From: Ramazzottius varieornatus
Taxonomy: Eukaryota; Animalia; Tardigrada
Assembly: GCA_001949185.1 (NCBI GenBank)
Contig: BDGG01000011.1
Coordinates: 202,123 to 266,122, forward strand
Length of the DNA: 64,000 nucleotides
Reading direction: 5' to 3'
Below, one piece after another: positions 21,440-32,342 of this stretch (positions are counted from its first letter, which is position 1; every line of letters begins with the position of its first letter). The position numbers were made by a program, and so were the translations under genes. The notes under the pieces are model-generated. The model made no database searches and was not told the DNA's origin. It saw only the letters and a list, made by a program, of their open reading frames with translations.

Positions 21440-21945
21440 GCCCCATGGAAAAGTTTTCCTGTGGTCTGTGAGGGATGATCCTGAGAACGACTGTTCTTGG
21501 GGGACTCTCCTCTGCAAAAGAATGAACAAAAATTATCCACGATGGATGGCAATCATGCATGGATTCATGGTTCTTGCTTGAACCTGAACTTTACGCCTTC
21601 TCTGTACAACTTCAAAGTGATCGTTGACCGGCAGCAGCGCTTTCAACTAGCTGCTACGAGTGGTACTCGGGAGAGAATTCCAAATTTCATACTTACTAAA
21701 GGCCTGCGCTCCAGGCATCACTTATTCCGACCTTGAAGTGTGGCCTTCTCACCGTTGATCTCCACCTTCTTTGTCTTCGACGGCGGAAAAAATTCTAGGT
21801 ACAACACAAAAAGGGTGGCAGACAGGAACACTACTTATATCGATGTCTTCCATCTGTCTTAACCTCGATATCAGTTCATCGCAGCCATACTATTCAGTCG
21901 CTACAGTTGTTTTCCAGACGACCGATTGCTTACGGACCCTCGATA
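21440..21945 (-). pseudogene. Possible heavily decayed Rab-family GTPase pseudogene
   Basis: Collinear minus-strand remnants SVVWKTT (cf. SGVGKT), KTKKVEINGEKATLQ (cf. KTVEINGEKVKLQ), AAGQRSL (cf. TAGQERF) and RG..VVL..LTDHRKTF, separated by intron-like segments, with stops and frameshifts. Confidence 0.4.
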
Positions 21946-21971
21946 TCTCGCCCAGTGGTTACGGAAAGTAG

Positions 21972-22009
21972 TATATAATAAAGGCCTGTTCCAGCTGAGC
22001 TCTTCAGTC
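21972..22009 (+). promoter_or_regulatory. TATA box + initiator of the Pro/Tyr-rich gene
   Basis: TATATAA at 21972 and arthropod-type Inr TCAGTC at 22004-22009, about 30-34 nt downstream. A pyrimidine-rich 5'UTR follows, then AAAATG at 22117-22122. Confidence 0.6.
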
Positions 22010-22119
22010 GACGTACGTTTGCTTTTCCTTCTTGGATCTTTCATTTCCCACGGTTCGCTGTTGTCTTCCTTGTTAGGTAGGTTTTCCTCCTAGCCCACTT
22101 TCCCTCCCTCCGATCGAAA

Positions 22120-23614
22120 ATGTGCACTGAAGCCAAGCCTATCTACCTCGGAGCCGAGCCATTCCTTCCCCACCAGTGGAACACCATCCCCAAGTACGGT
22201 CCATCGTACCCAGGTATGAAGACCTTCGAAGGACCCATGGCCGGACCCTACAACTACCCCACGGTCGGAAGCATCCCCGAATGGAAGCAAATGTACCCCG
22301 AGATCCCGTCTCCCGGTGCGTACTGGCAACCACCCACCACCAAGGTCCCAGGATACCCGTATCCTTACACTTGCAAGCCCGGTGAGTAACACCTACTCAA
22401 ACTTTCAAAAGCAATTTTGTTCCGTCAGGGTGGCGCAATTCGCGTATTTCACTGAAAGTGAAACTAACCGTTTTAGCTTCTCCTACGGTTTTCCAACCGG
22501 AACGTTGACGTTGTACAGAGACGCTTTTGTTACAGAGGGCGAATATTTCCCAGCCAAGCCATGGGAAACCAAGACCTGGGAGATGAAGAAGCCCTACGGA
22601 ACCATGCCTTGGGAGACCAAGCCCATGAACATGAGCTACTACAAGGACGCCATGTGCACCAAGGAGCCATGCTATCCTTATTACCAGCCCGGTAAGCGTT
22701 GTGTCTGTATCCTAAATCATGTCAGCTCTGCTCCTCACTGGCAAACCTCAAAGCACTGAAATTTGAAGCCAGCCATCAGGATCTTTGTCTGTGTTTCAGA
22801 GGCCGAGTACTACCCAACCAAGCCATTCGGACCCATGCCATGGGAGGTTAAGCCCAGCATGCCCATGACTTACTACAAGGACACCAAGGAAGGAAGCTTC
22901 CCATACAGCTTCCGTCCCGGTAAAAAGAGCTTGCTAACAAACTGGATGACTTGAACGAGACCTGTGCTAATCCGGTGTTGTTACTTTTGCAGAGTGGTTC
23001 CCCACCACCTATGGACCCAAGCCATGGGAAAACAAGACTGTCTTCCCCGGTATGCCTTTCTACAAGGAGTACATCAAGGATACATGCTACCCATACACCT
23101 ACAAACCAGGTATTCGCTGTTTAAATGCTGATAAAAATATTTCAAAGTGTCTTTTCAGCTTTCGAGTGAATTTCTAGCAGTGTTCTTACCAATACTGGTT
23201 TCTTGTGTTGCAGAGGGTGAATACTACCCATCCAAGCCCTGGGAGACCAAGCCATACGGGCCTTTCCCCATGTCGACTCCCGTCAGCCTGCCATACCCGC
23301 CCAAGTCGTACCCATACGAGAAGACGTATCCAGGCCAGCCATACTACGGACCCATGAACAAGCCATTCCCACCCACCATGTATCCATTCGACAAGGACTT
23401 CTACCCCACCATGCCCTACGGACCCAACATGTACCCGCTCGACCAAGAGACCGTGTACCCACGCAAGCCTTTCTACGGACCGGTCAACAAGCCATACGGA
23501 CCTTTCCCCGAGTACAAGACCGAGCCCAACTGGCACGGAGAGCTCCCTAACCAGTACACCTACGGATACGGAAACTTCCCCAACGGCCAGCAATCGTCCG
23601 TTCTCGGTGGATAG
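22120..23614 (+). CDS. Novel 351-aa Pro/Tyr/Lys/Met-rich repetitive protein; exons 22120-22381, 22536-22691, 22800-22919, 22993-23109, 23214-23614
   Basis: All four introns are GT-AG and phase 1; total 1056 nt open to TAG. Internal exons (156, 120, 117 nt) repeat the module E(G/A)EY(Y/F)PxKPWETK...YYKD...(C)YPYxx(K/R/Q)P. Strong TAC/AAG/CCC/ACC codon bias. Confidence 0.85.
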
Positions 23615-23858
23615 AATGCCATGTTTCGTGTCAATAGAGCATGAGTAGGTTTTTCCTTTGAGTTTCTCTCATCCCGGATGTTTTGATTCATCGCTTCGAA
23701 TTATGTCGCCATAGAGTTTAGTTGAAGATTTATCCACAGTTCATTTTCCGAAAAGCCGAAACGTAGAAAACAAAAGCCAGATCGCACGCATGCAGTAACA
23801 GCCACGGTGTAGTCCAACCATTTTATCTAACAATTGCTCACGATAATGAGTGTATCGT

Positions 23859-25443
23859 TCAAAGTTTAGTGACGCGTCCCATGAAAATAACCAGTCCGCT
23901 TCGCTCATCTCGAATTACAAAAATGAAAGGATGGTCTGCGACGAAGTTAACAGGGTCGGGGTTGAAGGATGTCGCTGAGCCCAAAACGGAGGTGGCAGCC
24001 GCTGCTTCGGTACCCCGCTCGTTTACTTCTGCAAAAACATATCGTATGGTTTTATATGGTTTTCCGAAGTATGCTCGTTGATTTTTCTGAAATGCTTCCA
24101 GCAACCACATGCCAAAGCAGAAGGGCAGTTTAACTACGCGCGAAATGGAAGCCGATAATGCTAGCAAACCGTATGGTTCTTGCATCGGCGCTGACCTACT
24201 GTACAGTATGAGGCCATCTCGGCTGGACACAAGAACGAATGGGTTAGCCTGCACTACAAACAATAAACGTACCGATAAATGCCTGGTGGATGATATCCGA
24301 AACGAACAACGGTTTGACCGCCGAGATGCCCGTGAGATCCGCCGTATCTGGGTTGAACAGTTGAAAGATCCCTGAGAAGATGTTTCGCTGTAAAGCATCT
24401 TTGGGTTGCAGGGTCGTTGTAATGGTAAATTTTGGCAATATTAAACTATCGATAGTGCGATTTCTTGCTTCGCTCAAAAATCTGTCGGGAAAGCCAGAGA
24501 AAATAGACTGTTGAAAGTTTCTCAGCCCGTCAGCGCTTGCATCACGCGGAAGGAAAATCAGCAAGGATAGTTCGTTGGACTTGTAAGGAATGGAAACCAT
24601 CTGGAACGCGGGAACTCCAAGGGCGCATCCCATTTCTCCCGCCCTATCCAGGTAGAGCATTGTTGCTTTGAACTTCGACATCATATCCACCTGATTAGTC
24701 GATCCATCCAGGTTGGTAAACGGTCTTTTGCTTGTCAAACGTTCGTCGAACTCATCCGCCCAAGCGGCCTTGAAATATATGGCGTTCACAAGGACCAGCC
24801 TTGTAAATTCGTTAACCGAACCTTGAGGCAGTAGCTCAGTGATCTTGCTGTTGGTCTGCTGGGATACCCACTGGTTGATTTCACTTCTCGCGCCTTCTGC
24901 CTTGTTGATAAAGTCAGCCAAGCCAAGTGTACTGTTGAGACTGGTCTTGATTGTTCTGATGTACGAAGCCAACACGTCGAAAGTTTGTTCGATGTAAGCT
25001 CGATTCGCCAAAGATAAATCATAAGCGGCTGAACCGTTGATAACTGGACCTGGGCGAAAGACGTTGAGGATAGACTGAAAGCTAGCCAATACATCCACTC
25101 CTTGGCTGACCTGGTCCTGCAGACCTAACGCGGTGGTCATCTCATTTTTAGTATCGCCCTTCGCACCAGCGTAGACCAGCATCAACGCGGACACGATACT
25201 TGTTGGAGAGTAAAAGAAGTTTTGCGCGGCAATAGAGGGATCTTCGAGGATGAGCTTGTACAATCGGAGAGCAAAGTCATTCAGGGGTGCTTGAAGAGTG
25301 ACGGAAGTGTTTTGGTAGGGCGTGACGGTTGATGGGGTGGTCGTAGTCGTGGTGGAATTGTAGTTCCCATACGATCCATAAGCAGCTTGAGCATGTTTCG
25401 TAACAAAAAGCAGGAAAGCTATTGTCCCGACTAAACGATTCAT
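23859..25443 (-). CDS. Secreted serpin 1; exons 25443-24273, 24028-23859
   Basis: Signal peptide, [45 protein letters not shown], hinge [13 protein letters not shown] and signature [12 protein letters not shown]...FMGRV. Confidence 0.95.
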
Positions 25444-27271: not shown

Positions 27272-28351
27272 ATGGTCTTTTTCCGGTCGTTGCTCAACTC
27301 TACGGAAGCCGATGTTCAGGACCCAGACCACGTTCTGAATACCAGTCTTCCTCATAACATTTCTGAAACCGCTACAGTTGTACCGGCGGCATGGTGGACG
27401 GTACTCTTTTACGCCTTGATGATCACGATAGCGATTGTTGGGAACCTACTGGTTATCCTTCTTGTTGCACTCTACCGAAAACTACGTACCCCCTTCAACT
27501 ACATTCTGTTGAACATCGCAGTGGCCGACGCGTTGGTTGGTCTCTTTTCGATGCCTCAGTATGCCGCAAGTTATCTTTACTTAGGATTGTGGTCTTTCTC
27601 TGATGCACAGTGCTCGTTCTGGATGTTCTTCGACTACTTCATGCCGGCAATTTCGTTATCCAGTATCGCAGCTCTGTCATGCGACCGCTGTTGGGCAGTG
27701 ACTTATCCAACAGCCTACCGAAACTACCACACCCATCGCAAAGCGTTCACCATCATTGGCATAACTTGGCTTTTTTCAGTCATTGGTGTTCTTCCCGGAT
27801 ATTCCTACACACGTTCGTACTTTGCAGACCAAAGCGTAAACCAGAGCTGTTCATGGAACGTCGATGGGTTGCCCGACTGGGCGACGGATTTTACCCCGCT
27901 GGCGGTGAACATCTGGATACCCTTCGCGATTACGCTTGCCTGTTATGTCGCTACTGTACTGAAGATATTGAACCTTCGTCTGAAACGGCAAGCCATCTTC
28001 CCGCATGCACTACCCGCAGCACAAAACTCAGCAGGCAGTCAAGGGAAATTCTTCAGAGCACGTCAGGACCGACAAGCGTTCAGAGTAGTGACATTATTGG
28101 TATGCGGGTTCTTCATCGCTTACATGCCCTGGACGATTTACTCAGTGCGCGCAGCGCTGCTGAAGTACGACGATCCAGCGATTTTTGGCGACCTGGCTTC
28201 GTGGATGAGCTACTCTTTATCGATGTTCAGTCCTTTCATATGCGGCGCTGGTAGTCGAGACCTACAGGAAGGGGTAAAGAAGCTTTTTGGAAGGGAAGAT
28301 CGTGGAAAGTTGAAGCGCTCGTCCATGAGAGTCAACACGATTGCAAACTGA
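27272..28351 (+). CDS. Intronless class A (rhodopsin-family) GPCR, biogenic-amine-receptor-like, 359 aa
   Basis: N-glycosylation sequons in the N-terminus, GNLLVI (TM1), IAVADALVG (TM2), C3.25..D3.32 (CSFWMFFD), DRC, W4.50, TM5 WIPF, TM6 FFIAYMP and TM7 WMSY..SPFIC. Confidence 0.92.
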   Translation: MVFFRSLLNSTEADVQDPDHVLNTSLPHNISETATVVPAAWWTVLFYALMITIAIVGNLLVILLVALYRKLRTPFNYILLNIAVADALVGLFSMPQYAASYLYLGLWSFSDAQCSFWMFFDYFMPAISLSSIAALSCDRCWAVTYPTAYRNYHTHRKAFTIIGITWLFSVIGVLPGYSYTRSYFADQSVNQSCSWNVDGLPDWATDFTPLAVNIWIPFAITLACYVATVLKILNLRLKRQAIFPHALPAAQNSAGSQGKFFRARQDRQAFRVVTLLVCGFFIAYMPWTIYSVRAALLKYDDPAIFGDLASWMSYSLSMFSPFICGAGSRDLQEGVKKLFGREDRGKLKRSSMRVNTIAN

Positions 28352-28622
28352 GTGTCCGAGAATACTGCCGTTCTTGAGCACTCGTGCACTTGGTCCCTCA
28401 AGCCAACATGTACAGGCACGGGAAAGAATGTCACTGAGAGTGCGTGACCGCATGAACTTTGTTAAGTGGCCCGATAACAAAACACCCTTACAACACGTTG
28501 CAGCCTTGCATAAACTTGAAACACGTTCCGTGGAAGAGTCATCTCAACGCAGGGCTTCCTCGGCGAACTAAACATCTTGATATACAGCTGACTCGATTTC
28601 AAGCAATTTGTCGCATGACTAT

Positions 28623-29203
28623 GGGCGGCTATCGCCGCCATATGTCGTTTTCCAGTTTAACAGGTATTTCTGTCAAGTTCCAACGTTTGCTTGATATAAT
28701 GTCACGCATTNNNNNNNNNNNNNNNNNNNNNNNNNNNNNNNNNNNNNNNNNNNNNNNNNNNNNNNNNNNNNNNNNNNNNNNNNNNNNNNNNNNNNNNNNN
28801 NNNNNNNNNNNNNNNNNNNNNNNNNNNNNNNNNNNNNNNNNNNNNNNNNNNNNNNNNNNNNNNNNNNNNNNNNNNNNNNNNNNNNNNNNNNNNNNNNNNN
28901 NNNNNNNNNNNNNNNNNNNNNNNNNNNNNNNNNNNNNNNNNNNNNNNNNNNNNNNNNNNNNNNNNNNNNNNNNNNNNNNNNNNNNNNNNNNNNNNNNNNN
29001 NNNNNNNNNNNNNNNNNNNNNNNNNNNNNNNNNNNNNNNNNNNNNNNNNNNNNNNNNNNNNNNNNNNNNNNNNNNNNNNNNNNNNNNNNNNNNNNNNNNN
29101 NNNNNNNNNNNNNNNNNNNNNNNNNNNNNNNNNNNNNNNNNNNNNNNNNNNNNNNNNNNNNNNNNNNNNNNNNNNNNNNNNNNTATGGCGGCGATGGCCG
29201 CCC
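28623..29203. mobile_element. MITE spanning the assembly gap (GGG..CCC termini flanked by AT; ISL2EU/Harbinger-like)
   Basis: TATGGGCGGCTATCGCCGCCATA (28620-28642) is the near-perfect reverse complement of TATGGCGGCGATGGCCGCCCATA (29184-29206). Confidence 0.65.
28711..29183. other. Assembly gap (473 N)
   Basis: Run of n characters. Confidence 1.
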
Positions 29204-29454
29204 ATACATGACCACCAGCACCTGCTTCTGATAAAGTTCTGTCATTAATGGAAATTCCGGCAGGAATAAACATCGGTATTTGATGTTGATTAATGTACGA
29301 ATATCACGATTATGGAAGCGGGAATCTGATGAGTTGGGCATAAATTGGGATCGTTTGACTGCATCGATGGGCGACATCGGTGGAACTGGAGGTGGTAGAT
29401 GTACCGAGGAGGAAGTGACGGCTGGACGCATCAGCCTTCCACCTGTTCTTCTGA

Positions 29455-30300
29455 GGTGCACAGGTCCTGTTAGCGAGATTAGAGACAGATCCGCTTGATT
29501 TGAGTCGAATAGTTACCTGATGCCGAGACTTTGTAAGGCTTCTGCGGGCATCTTGAACGACGAGATGGTAAACTGCGCCGAAGACGGACGAGCGATTATA
29601 CGCTTCGTCGTCTTGCTAAAGATGACGTCCAGTGGTATTATCGACATGAACGCGCCCTCGAGCGGGCTTAGATCAGCAACATCTTTCGGCACGAAAAGCA
29701 ACAACGAGAACTGCGCTCCTTCGAATGGGAGCACTGGCATCTGAAACGGCAGAAGAACCCAGTGCTCTGCGGCGAAGTTTTCAAAGTAAAACAGGTTCTT
29801 TATTAATCTTGTGCATCATAATATCCATTTTGCTTCTCGGGGCCGGCAAGGTGTTGAACTGCGCTTTGGAACTCGACGGCCCATGCAGTTAAAACAGATT
29901 GCATTGACCAAGACTAGAGCCGTGAAAGAGTTAACCGTTTCAGCCGGAATCTTTTGGTTCATGTGTTTTACCACCCACTGATTGATCTCATGTCTCGTTG
30001 CCTCAAAATAATCCGAAAATTAACCAGTCCAACTGTGCTGTTGAGGATGGTCGTAATCCAGGCCGTAAACGAAGCCAAGACGTCTAGAGTTTGCTCGATG
30101 TAACCACGATTCGCCAAAGACATATTAAAAGCAACTATGCCGTTGATAGTTGAGCCAGGACGACAGATAATAGTTACAGACTGGAAACGGGCCAGTGTGT
30201 CCCCTCCTTGCTTGACTTGGTTCTGCAGGTTGAACGCAATAGTCATTTCAATTTTAGTGTCGCCCTGCGCACCAGCGTCAAGGTGGGCATAATACTTGTT
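29455..30300 (-). pseudogene. Serpin pseudogene, paralogous to serpin 1
   Basis: GAQGDTKIEMTIAFNLQNQVKQGGDTLARFQS...SLANRGYIEQTLDVLASF...LNSTVGL aligns with serpin 1 [32 protein letters not shown]...[18 protein letters not shown]...LNSTLGL. Later remnants LVLVNAICF, SLLLFVP and LFDSNQADL. Multiple frameshifts and stops; no RCL exon seen. Confidence 0.88.
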
Positions 30301-30969: not shown

Positions 30970-32342
30970 CTAAAACGAAGCAATTCTGCCCATAAACGTG
31001 ATTAGACCAGTCTTTTCGTGGCGAATGACAAACAGGAACGGATGATCGGCGCGGAATTCCACCGGAGGCAGGATGTCACGTTCGATGAACATGGCGGTGC
31101 GAGTCATCACTGCGGCGGTAGCGGCAGCCGCCTCTGTCCCTTTCTCGTTTACCTCTGGAGAAAAAGGAATGAAAACTATAGACCTCAACCTAACTACATT
31201 CTCACTCGAGCACCAGAGTTCATGATCTTACCGATGAAGGCTTTGTGGACAACTGCGGAAACTCGCATGGGCGAATCCGAAATACCACTAAAGTCCGCGT
31301 CGTTAAACATCTTTTCGACGCCCAGACTTTGCAACGTACTTCCCAAGTTGAAGGATTTCTCCACCTTGAACTTCGGCAGATACACATTAGCTTTTCTCTC
31401 CGTCATCCCTTTGTACACCACATCCAAGTTGGCCGCCGTCAGCGCCTTCTCCAAAGCCGGCAAGCCCTTCTTCTCTTTCGGCAAAAAGACCAAGAGAGAC
31501 AAGTCACCGGTCTTGTACGGAATAGCCAAGGTGTGGAATGCCGGCATGCCGTTCTTTGAACTCTCCAAATTATCGAAATACTGATACATCTTCCCGTTGA
31601 TATTCATCAGATCGACCTTCGAGTTCACCCCTTTCAGGTTGAAGAAATCTTCCTTCGTGGTAAACCCCTCGACGAACTGATTGACCCATGCCGCTTTGAA
31701 GTAGATGGCGTTGATGAGAACCATCAATGTCGAACTATCGATCGTACCTGGCTGTAGCAAGTTCTTGATCTTCCCATTAGTCTGGCTTTCCACCCACTTG
31801 TTGATCTCCTGTCGGACCGCGTTGGCTTTCGTGTGGAAATCCACAACGCCAACGGTACTGTTGAGTTTGTTGGATATGGTGTTGATGTAGTCTTTCTTGA
31901 CGTTTAGGGTCTTCTCGATGTAGGCACGGTTGGCTAACGACAGGTTGTAGGGAAGTTCGCCATCGAAGGAGGGTTGAGGTGGAGAGAAGACGGAAAAGGC
32001 CGTGCTGAAATGGTCTATGATTGTATCCGGGGACGAGCCTTGCAGGCGAAGAGCTTTGGCGATCTGGTCCTGGGTTGTTCCTTTAGCACCGGCATAAGCG
32101 AGAAGCAAGCACGACGAGATACTCAGAGGAGAGAAGAACAAGTTGGTCGAAGCGGCGTCGGATGATCCACTCAGGGCTTTGTACAAATCAAGGGAGAATC
32201 CATCGAGCGATGATCGGACATTGTCCTGGCTGGATACGGAGATGTCCGAGGACTTGCTCTTTGATTTCCCGGTGCTGGCTGCTTCGAACAAGCTGGCCGC
32301 CGCAATCAAGCACAGCGTCAGAGACAGCTTCAAGGAAGCCAT
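30970..32342 (-). CDS. Secreted serpin 2; exons 32342-31232, 31154-30970
   Basis: Signal peptide, [58 protein letters not shown] and [17 protein letters not shown]. The intron is at the same phase-1 position as in serpin 1. Confidence 0.95.

What the first reader, a model, noticed from the sequence alone, without database searches (positions are those of the whole stretch)
22120..23614. Unrecognised Pro/Tyr-rich protein assembled from duplicated, symmetric phase-1 exon modules
Seen: five exons, every intron phase 1, and internal exons of 156/120/117 nt (all multiples of 3), so any of them can be skipped without a frameshift. Each module starts E(G/A)EY(Y/F)PxKP, carries KPWE(T/N)K or MPWE(T/V)K, and ends YYK(D/E)...(C)YPYxx(K/R/Q)P. 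The last exon switches to PYYGPMNKPF / PFYGPVNKPY repeats. There is no signal peptide (in-frame TAG at 22078), a clean TATA+Inr promoter and extreme codon bias. Inference: a highly expressed, lineage-specific, intrinsically disordered structural or stress protein that grew by exon duplication. The regularly spaced Tyr/Trp in a Pro-rich spacer suggests phase separation/gelation or di-Tyr/DOPA cross-linking, by compositional analogy (not homology) to extensins and mussel foot proteins. I recognise no known family. The ORF track shows it only as unrelated fragments.
Basis: partly seen in the sequence, partly recalled or inferred. Interest (0 to 1): 0.85.

Follow-up and report, generated by a model that had tools for sequence, protein, structure and literature searches.

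The report
Abundant orphan Pro/Tyr-rich tardigrade protein
This is a real, correctly spliced and very abundantly transcribed gene of the tardigrade Ramazzottius varieornatus (already in GenBank as hypothetical protein RvY_14811); it encodes a non-secreted, probably disordered protein, one fifth proline and one fifth aromatic residues, that grew by duplicating one exon, has no known family and has never been studied.

Summary
The five exons (22120-22381, 22536-22691, 22800-22919, 22993-23109, 23214-23614, + strand) are joined through four GT..AG phase-1 introns. Spliced contigs from four sequencing runs in four studies show exactly these junctions. The product is identical to GenBank GAV04543.1, "hypothetical protein RvY_14811" of Ramazzottius varieornatus, so the gene model itself is not new.

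Exons 2, 3, 4 and the start of exon 5 are true duplicates (z 6.5-12 against composition-preserving shuffles). The gene is single-copy. It has no signal peptide, no upstream ATG, strong codon bias (Nc 33) and about 110,000 reads per library in a published cDNA-library screen.

No Pfam, PDB or ESM Atlas relative exists. An exhaustive phmmer search of 1.84 billion proteins found only the protein itself and one 129-aa fragment, 56% identical by phmmer (61% in the MAFFT alignment), from an unknown organism. Structure predictors give disorder (pLDDT about 40).

Function is inferred only. I favour a bulk cytoplasmic, self-associating "aromatic sticker / proline spacer" protein. Extracellular DOPA or di-tyrosine cross-linking, as in extensins or mussel foot proteins, is unlikely without a signal peptide. 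Exon skipping was not seen, but contigs cannot exclude it.

The parts
21972..21978 (+). TATA box (TATATAA), about 28-34 nt upstream of the apparent transcript start
   Evidence: position relative to contig starts
22004..22008 (+). Initiator-like TCAGT; contigs of three runs begin at 22005/22006 (one begins at 21986)
   Evidence: contig ends suggest but do not prove a transcription start
22006..22119 (+). 5' UTR: no ATG, in-frame TAG at 22078-22080
22120..22381 (+). Exon 1 (coding part, 262 nt): Met1 to the first base of codon 88. No signal peptide. Its 3' end (TKVPGYPYPYTCKP) is a partial module end.
   Evidence: families D4/D6
22382..22535 (+). Intron 1, 154 nt, GT..AG, phase 1
22536..22691 (+). 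Exon 2, 156 nt, module M2 (EGEYFPAKPWETK...MPWETKP...YYKD...CYPYYQP), with an internal extra KPWETKTWEMK segment
22692..22799 (+). Intron 2, 108 nt, GT..AG, phase 1
22800..22919 (+). Exon 3, 120 nt, module M3
22920..22992 (+). Intron 3, 73 nt, GT..AG, phase 1
22993..23109 (+). Exon 4, 117 nt, module M4 (the most diverged start, EWFPTT)
23110..23213 (+). Intron 4, 104 nt, GT..AG, phase 1
23214..23614 (+). Exon 5 coding part (401 nt including the TAG stop): a module-like start (EGEYYPSKPWETKPYGP), then P[YF]YGP[MV]NKP[FY] x2 and MYP[FL]D x2 sub-repeats, then the tail EPNWHGE...YGYGN. This is the part conserved in the only relative found, P0002.
23615..23835 (+). 3' UTR. Contigs end at 23786, about 23833-23835 and about 23935. 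No canonical AATAAA. The end is not defined and it converges on the 3' end of a serpin gene on the minus strand.

Best explanation
RvY_14811 is a single-copy, taxonomically restricted gene of Ramazzottius varieornatus. It is driven by a TATA/Inr promoter and is among the most abundant mRNAs of the animal. It encodes a 41-kDa, near-neutral (pI 7.45), non-secreted protein with 20.5% Pro, 21.4% aromatic residues (Tyr 13.7%), 8.8% Lys, 7.4% Glu and only 7.4% Ala+Ile+Leu+Val. It therefore cannot build a hydrophobic core and is predicted to be disordered. The gene grew by repeated duplication of one symmetric (phase 1-1) exon of about 40-50 codons, each copy bounded by ...[YF]PYxx[KRQ]P | E.... Shown: the gene structure, splicing, duplication, abundance, lack of a signal peptide, lack of any family, and conservation of motifs in one relative. 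Inferred: the protein acts as bulk cytoplasmic material. Closely spaced aromatic 'stickers' (largest gap 11 residues) and alternating Lys/Glu, held in stiff proline-rich spacers, would give multivalent pi-pi and cation-pi self-association. At high concentration, for example on water loss, this would produce condensates or a gel. The five-fold repeated [KM]PWE[TVN]K motif could also be a multivalent docking site for a partner.
For: Structure and splicing. Identity with GAV04543.1 / RvY_14811. Duplication. Similarity reaches the acceptor (TGTTnCAG|AG) and donor (CCCG|GTRAG) sites, and the partial module at the end of exon 1. Single copy, with the module found nowhere else in the genome. High expression: codon bias. 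In PMC11654893 supplement 2, baseMean is 112,989, above all 33 R. varieornatus rows shown in part 1, whose maximum is 47,847. Spliced contigs are present in 19 runs from 8 studies. No signal peptide or transmembrane segment: maximum Kyte-Doolittle 15-residue hydropathy is 0.3; there is no upstream ATG and an in-frame stop lies upstream. Disorder: AF2 pLDDT 40.6 with no secondary structure; ESM Atlas pLDDT 0.38 and pTM 0.09; the charge-hydropathy plot puts it on the disordered side. Selection on sequence, not only composition: P0002 matches exon 5 at E 2.2e-14. P0002 is 56% identical to exon 5 by phmmer and 61% in the MAFFT alignment. Pro is conserved at 18/25 aligned positions, aromatic class at 17/24, and EPNWHGE is invariant. 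Slight enrichment in desiccated E. coli libraries: log2FC +0.31, padj 6e-10.
Against: There is no experimental evidence of condensation, gelation or any stress role. The E. coli enrichment is small (1.24-fold, one of 385 over-represented cDNAs) and the clones may be partial or out of frame. The id was not found in the supplements held for the TFE-condensing proteome paper (PMC9592077) or in desiccation, UV or embryo transcriptome papers, although ids may differ or tables may be cut. Single-sequence structure prediction is weak evidence of disorder. High proline content usually disfavours amyloid-like or beta assemblies and can keep aromatic-rich chains soluble. The tissue of expression is unknown.
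Confidence: 0.4

Rival explanations
1. It is a structural precursor that is covalently cross-linked through Tyr (di-tyrosine, DOPA/quinone) or Lys/Gln (transglutaminase) into a hardened material. That material could be extracellular (cuticle, claws, buccal apparatus, eggshell) after unconventional export. Or it could be intracellular, like the cornified-envelope small proline-rich proteins.
For: The Lys/Pro/Tyr/Thr-rich composition resembles mussel foot protein 1 and proline-rich cuticle and eggshell proteins (established knowledge; composition). There are nine YxY sites, 31 Lys and a C-terminal QQ. Very high expression is typical of structural proteins. Cornified-envelope precursors also lack signal peptides (established knowledge).
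Against: There is no signal peptide or hydrophobic segment, and the 5' end is well supported. There is no chitin-binding or other cuticle domain. Gln is only 2.6%. Peroxidase and tyrosinase cross-linking normally occurs outside the cell. There is no short-period tandem repeat as in mfp-1 or extensin.
Confidence: 0.2
2. It is a multivalent adaptor or scaffold. The repeated short linear motifs ([KM]PWE[TVN]K x5, EY[YF]PxKP x3, PxxP x19) recruit several copies of a folded partner, so function lies in specific binding rather than bulk material properties.
For: The exact motif is kept across four old duplicates whose DNA is only 44-76% identical. It is also kept in the relative P0002 (EGEFYPTKQWECKPYGP). 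That pattern is typical of functional linear motifs.
Against: Expression is far above what is usual for adaptors. The motif matches no known ligand class that I could test: there is no PPxY, NPF or DP[FW]. No partner is known.
Confidence: 0.15
3. It is an amino-acid reservoir or sacrificial shield. As a reservoir it would be a soluble store of poorly soluble tyrosine (and proline) for cuticle synthesis at moults or for eggs, functionally like insect arylphorins. As a shield it would be a UV-absorbing, radical-scavenging sink rich in oxidisable residues: Tyr, Trp, Phe, Met, Cys and His together make up 100 of its 351 residues.
For: Aromatic residues are 21.4% and Met 5.1%. Abundance is very high. 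R. varieornatus is markedly UV- and radiation-tolerant (PMC5034306, PMC9145152).
Against: Arylphorins are secreted, folded hexamerins, and no hemocyanin domains are present here. Motif-level conservation is more than a reservoir would need. The id was not among genes found in the UV-response supplement held.
Confidence: 0.1

Closest known systems
Tardigrade-specific abundant disordered proteins (CAHS, SAHS, MAHS, LEAM, Dsup)
   Same: Lineage-restricted, very highly and apparently constitutively expressed in R. varieornatus, predicted disordered, no homologues outside tardigrades. CAHS proteins are also cytoplasmic and form gels (PMC9592077).
   Different: No sequence similarity: the exhaustive phmmer search returned only the protein itself and one fragment. 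The composition is opposite. It is Pro/aromatic-rich with no predicted helix, whereas CAHS, MAHS and LEAM are helix-prone and charged, SAHS is a folded FABP-like secreted protein, and Dsup is a basic nuclear protein. It is single-copy rather than a multigene family.
Mussel foot protein 1 / plant extensins
   Same: Lys/Pro/Tyr/Thr-rich extended chains with closely spaced Tyr.
   Different: Those are secreted, built of short tandem peptides (AKPSYPPTYK; Ser-Pro3-5), and post-translationally hydroxylated in the secretory pathway. Here there is no signal peptide, no SPPP and no short-period tandem array. The repeat unit is a 39-52-residue exon.
Cornified-envelope small proline-rich proteins (SPRR) and related epidermal precursors
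   Same: No signal peptide, proline-rich, repeat-built, very highly expressed cytoplasmic precursors (established knowledge).
   Different: SPRRs are small, built of octa- or nonapeptide repeats in a single coding exon, with Gln/Lys-rich ends for transglutaminase. Here Gln is 2.6% and the repeats are whole exons. No homology was found.
Aromatic 'sticker-spacer' low-complexity domains (FUS/hnRNPA1-type)
   Same: Evenly distributed aromatic residues in a disordered chain of low net charge. This is the feature known to drive phase separation.
   Different: Those spacers are Gly/Ser/Gln/Asn-rich. Here the spacer is Pro/Lys/Thr/Glu, only one [GS]Y[GS] site exists, and there is no RNA-binding domain.

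Membership tests
Any Pfam family, including cuticle chitin-binding (R&R), hexamerin/arylphorin and LEA | Match to the family profile above threshold | tested here: not met
   No hit at E<=10 for any exon piece or for the full-length public protein.
Proteins with a solved structure | Sequence match to a PDB chain | tested here: not met
   phmmer against PDB sequences gave no hit at E<=10.
CAHS/SAHS/MAHS/Dsup tardigrade families | Detectable sequence homology to family members, which are all present in public protein sets | tested here: not met
   The exhaustive phmmer search with exon 5 gave 2 hits only. Word-seeded searches with the full length and with residues 88-232 returned the query only. 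The N-terminal 219 residues were not searched exhaustively.
CAHS/LEA-like | Amphipathic helix propensity | tested here: not met
   AF2 predicts no helix or strand. Pro is 20.5%.
Extensin / HRGP | Signal peptide and Ser-Pro(3-5) repeats | tested here: not met
   No SPPP. No hydrophobic N-terminus.
Mussel foot protein 1-like adhesives | Signal peptide and tandem decapeptide repeats | tested here: not met
   TRF finds no short-period array in the gene. No signal peptide. DOPA content is not testable here.
Secreted proteins in general | N-terminal signal peptide on the true first Met | tested here: not met
   Transcript contigs start at 21986-22006. There is no ATG before 22120 and an in-frame TAG at 22078. 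The N-terminus MCTEAKPIYLGAEPF is not hydrophobic. No dedicated signal-peptide predictor was available.
Phase-separating aromatic-sticker IDPs (functional class, not a homology family) | Disorder, evenly spaced aromatic residues and low net charge; condensation shown in vitro or in vivo | tested here: inconclusive
   The sequence features are met. Condensation itself is not testable with these tools.

The most novel reading that the evidence does not exclude
RvY_14811 founds a new class of tardigrade tolerance protein. It would be a Ramazzottius-lineage-specific, constitutively super-abundant, proline/aromatic 'sticker-spacer' protein that reversibly gels or vitrifies the cytoplasm on water loss, or shields it from UV and radicals. 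It would act by a chemistry quite unlike the helical CAHS/LEA proteins, and would help explain why R. varieornatus is tougher than Hypsibius, where no counterpart was detected in protein databases.
Probability: 0.15. Interest if true: 0.8.

Novelty: new variant of a known kind. Interest (0 to 1): 0.55.

Why it matters
R. varieornatus is the reference extremotolerant animal. Its known protective proteins were nearly all found because they are lineage-specific, abundant and disordered. This gene has all three properties, with a read count above every row visible in the part of the cDNA-screen table that I could read. Yet its id and accessions were absent from every paper text I searched, and it appears only as one row in a supplementary table. 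Its chemistry is unlike the known families: a rigid Pro spacer, 21% aromatic residues and near-neutral charge. It is therefore a cheap, well-defined candidate for knockout (DIPA-CRISPR exists for this species) and for in-vitro condensate and cross-linking tests. It is also a clean textbook case of protein growth by duplication of a symmetric phase-1 exon, with the splice sites duplicated along with the exon.

Tried and rejected
- **Family and structure searches, all blank.** Pfam on each exon and on the full-length protein, PDB sequences, and the ESM Atlas by features and by structure (TM at most 0.28 on a pLDDT-0.38 model, which is meaningless).
- **Homologue searches.** Exhaustive phmmer with exon 5 gave the protein itself plus P0002 only. 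Word-seeded searches with the full length, the exon5+P0002 profile and residues 88-232 added nothing. Two scans of JGI metagenome contigs gave no relative.
- **Paralogues in the same genome.** None was found with exon 1, exon 5 or the module profile, nor in the window by tblastn.
- **Origin of P0002.** Its DNA, organism and intron could therefore not be examined.
- **Literature.** The strings RvY_14811, GAV04543 and A0A1D1VWA5 occur in no main text. Supplements of PMC9145152, PMC10939073, PMC9592077, PMC6925440 and PMC5531438 hold no occurrence. None were held for PMC5034306 and PMC9791283. These blanks may reflect other id schemes or truncated files.
- **Exon 1 and exon-5 tail.** Exon 1 as a whole and the exon-5 tail are not significantly alike beyond composition (z 0.6-1.6). 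Only the last ~8 codons of exon 1 (22338-22362, TKVPGYPY) match the module end (families D4/D6).
- **Fold search.** Not run, because a pLDDT-40 model gives meaningless matches.
- **Complex prediction.** Not run, because a disordered homomer would give no usable verdict.
- **Joined model.** Exons were searched by reference. The full-length sequence used (P0001) is the public protein that the exon-5 search returned.

Full report
**1. What is in the sequence**

Reading 21700-24000 and a script confirm five coding exons on the + strand:
- exon 1: 22120-22381 (262 nt)
- exon 2: 22536-22691 (156 nt)
- exon 3: 22800-22919 (120 nt)
- exon 4: 22993-23109 (117 nt)
- exon 5: 23214-23614 (401 nt including the TAG stop)

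The four introns are 154, 108, 73 and 104 nt. All are GT..AG and all interrupt a codon after its first base (G|AG = Glu). The three internal exons are multiples of three and symmetric (phase 1-1). Skipping any of them would therefore keep the frame, which is true by arithmetic.

The introns are less G+C-rich (0.35-0.45) than the locus as a whole (0.50 for 22001-24000, which includes the introns and flanks).

**2. The gene is real and spliced as predicted**

Nineteen public runs from eight studies hold about 65% of the sampled words of 21900-23800. That is the share expected if the introns and promoter are missing.

Contigs of four runs from four studies (1344-1494 nt) lie on the stretch with no differing letters. 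They show exactly four joints, which skip 154, 108, 73 and 104 nt with GT..AG ends.

- Three contigs start at 22005/22006 and one at 21986.
- They end at 23786, at about 23833-23835, and at about 23935.
- No exon-skipped form appeared. Contigs drop rare variants, so this does not exclude skipping.
- The runs are only guessed to be RNA. However, an intron-less form with canonical splice ends in four studies is hard to explain otherwise.

**3. Identity**

The window's genome has 55.8 Mb in 200 contigs.

The exhaustive phmmer search of 1.84 billion representative proteins with exon 5 returned two proteins.

- **P0001** is 351 aa and 100% identical over residues 220-351. It is GAV04543.1 / UniRef A0A1D1VWA5, "hypothetical protein RvY_14811 [Ramazzottius varieornatus]". 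Its exon pieces equal my translations.
- **P0002** is a 129-aa unnamed ENA protein from an 1863-nt contig. It is 56% identical to exon 5 by phmmer (61% in the MAFFT alignment), with E 2.2e-14.

P0002 begins with MLMTRFRFVV, which is not Pro/Tyr-rich, followed directly by EGEFYPTKQWECKPYGP. This looks like a prokaryote-style ORF call reading out of an intron into the orthologous last exon. If so, the phase-1 intron before "EGE" would be conserved (inference).

**4. No family**

- Pfam found nothing at E<=10 for the pieces or the whole protein.
- PDB sequences gave nothing.
- The ESM Atlas gave no usable feature hit.
- Word-seeded searches of 5.8 billion proteins returned only the queries. These used the full length, residues 88-232, and the exon5+P0002 profile.
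- Two scans of JGI metagenome contigs gave nothing.
- Within the genome, exon 1, exon 5 and a profile of the four modules hit only this gene.

It is a single-copy orphan. No Hypsibius counterpart surfaced in the protein databases. That is suggestive only, because no tardigrade genome other than this one could be searched.

**5. Architecture and origin**

Modules M2 (exon 2), M3 (exon 3), M4 (exon 4) and M5 (the first 45 residues of exon 5) align. Smith-Waterman scores lie far above 500 composition-preserving shuffles:

| Pair | z |
|---|---|
| M2-M3 | 12.1 |
| M2-M5 | 9.7 |
| M3-M4 | 8.8 |
| M2-M4 | 6.5 |
| M3-M5 | 4.2 |
| M4-M5 | 2.1 |

The repeats are therefore homologous and not merely alike in composition. 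Further points:

- **Age.** DNA identity over aligned codons is 44-76%, so the duplications are old.
- **Splice sites.** Similarity runs into the splice sites. The acceptors read TGTTACAG|AG, TGTTTCAG|AG and TGTTGCAG|AG, and the donors CCCG|GTGAG and CCCG|GTAAG (families D2 and D7).
- **Exon 1.** The 3' end of exon 1 (TKVPGYPYPYTCKP) matches the module ends TKEPCYPY, TKEGSFPY and IKDTCYPY (families D4 and D6). Every intron thus sits in the same ...[YF]PYx(1-2)[KRQ]P | E... context.
- **Exon 2.** It carries an extra internal KPWETKTWEMK segment.
- **Exon 5.** After the module-like start it has P[YF]YGP[MV]NKP[FY] twice and MYP[FL]D twice (D5).
- **Tandem arrays.** There is no short-period tandem array.

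**6. The protein**

- Size and charge: 41.2 kDa, pI 7.45.
- Composition: Pro 20.5%, Tyr 13.7%, Lys 8.8%, Thr 8.0%, Gly 7.7%, Glu 7.4%, Met 5.1%, Phe 4.6%, Trp 3.1%.
- Aromatic residues total 21.4%, with gaps between them of 1-11 residues (mode 5).
- Ala+Ile+Leu+Val total only 7.4%.
- K+R 33 against D+E 32.
- No window of 15 residues exceeds Kyte-Doolittle 0.3, so there is no signal peptide or membrane segment.
- The first ATG of the transcript is 22120. It is preceded by an in-frame TAG at 22078 and by no other ATG back to 21986.
- AF2 (single sequence) gives mean pLDDT 40.6 and no secondary structure.
- The ESM Atlas's own model has pLDDT 0.38 and pTM 0.09.
- The charge-hydropathy plot places it on the unfolded side.
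- Against P0002, Pro (18/25), aromatic class (17/24), charged residues and the block EPNWHGE are kept. Selection therefore acts on sequence and not only on composition.

**7. Expression**

Codon usage is strongly biased. Nc is 33.2 and GC3 0.74, against Nc 40-61 and GC3 0.52 for 27 long open frames of the window. That background is crude, since some of those frames are not genes. Examples are AAG 30:1, TTC 16:0, AAC 11:0, ATC 5:0 and TAC 41:7.

A TATATAA lies at 21972 and TCAGT at 22004, with contig starts at 22005/22006.

Independent evidence comes from the expression-cloning screen of Hibshman et al. (Cell Rep 2024, PMC11654893). Supplement 2 lists RvY_14811 at BDGG01000011:224242-225736, which equals window 22120-23614.

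- Control libraries: 108,154, 92,122, 96,459 and 133,392 reads.
- Desiccated libraries: 110,544, 123,963, 122,879 and 126,216 reads.
- baseMean 112,989, log2FC +0.31, padj 6.4e-10.
- Its baseMean is more than twice that of any of the 33 R. varieornatus rows visible in part 1 of the table (maximum 47,847).

So the cDNA is among the most abundant in the library. The 1.24-fold enrichment after drying E. coli is significant but small. The top hit in that part of the table has log2FC 3.8, and this gene is one of 385 over-represented cDNAs. I treat it as weak evidence.

**8. Surroundings**

Downstream and convergent lies a serpin gene (23859-25443, minus strand, two open pieces), whose 3' end the longest contig may overlap. 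A rhodopsin-type GPCR is at 27272-28351 (+) and a second serpin at 31194-32342 (-). Nothing suggests a functional cluster. Notes of this scan near the window concern other genes and did not bear on this one.

**9. How it most likely works**

Shown:
- an abundant, non-secreted, probably disordered Pro/aromatic protein built from duplicated exons
- motifs conserved in one relative

Inferred:
- High proline keeps the chain extended and prevents collapse.
- About 75 aromatic side chains plus alternating Lys/Glu offer many weak pi-pi, cation-pi and electrostatic contacts.
- At the concentrations implied by its mRNA level, and more so when water is lost, such a chain should self-associate into condensates or a gel.

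This is my preferred reading (0.4). Rivals are:
- a covalently cross-linked structural precursor (0.2), weakened by the lack of a signal peptide
- a multivalent adaptor using [KM]PWE[TVN]K (0.15)
- a tyrosine store or UV/radical sink (0.1)

The remainder is unknown.

**10. Comparison and novelty**

It works most like aromatic sticker-spacer disordered proteins. In biological setting it resembles the tardigrade-specific abundant disordered proteins. It is not a member of any of these families (see the membership table). The extensin and mussel-foot analogy is compositional only and fails on secretion and repeat type.

I rate it a new variant of a known kind, namely a lineage-specific abundant disordered protein. 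Its chemistry is unusual and its exon-duplication history is clean. Interest is moderate (0.55): the gene model is public, but the protein is unstudied and directly testable.

Noticed in passing
window 23859-25443 (-): Serpin gene in two open pieces (Pfam Serpin positions 3-315 and 312-369), convergent with RvY_14811. The longest RvY_14811 contig (run X5) appears to run to about 23935, so the two 3' ends may overlap.
   Followed up: partly
window 31194-32342 (-): A second serpin open frame (Pfam Serpin E 4e-86). With the first, this makes two serpin genes within 9 kb.
   Followed up: no
window 27272-28351 (+): Rhodopsin-family 7TM receptor in one long open frame (Pfam 7tm_1, E 1.6e-40).
   Followed up: no
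window 28711-29183: A run of 473 N (assembly gap or withheld stretch). It explains the low G+C of the 28001-30000 bin. ORFs listed across it are artefacts.
   Followed up: yes
window 21986-22006: One run's contig (X1) starts 20 nt upstream of the other three, inside the TATA-to-Inr spacer. This could be a minor upstream start or an assembly effect; it cannot be decided from contigs.
   Followed up: no
window 23615-23950: No canonical AATAAA or ATTAAA in the 3' UTR, although contigs end at three different places (23786, about 23834, about 23935). The polyadenylation signal and site are undefined.
   Followed up: partly
runs X11-X14: Four runs of one 2022 study carry four different organism labels, yet hold this transcript near-identically. 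X12, the one laid, has no differing letter over 1344 nt. The labels probably do not denote different species.
   Followed up: no
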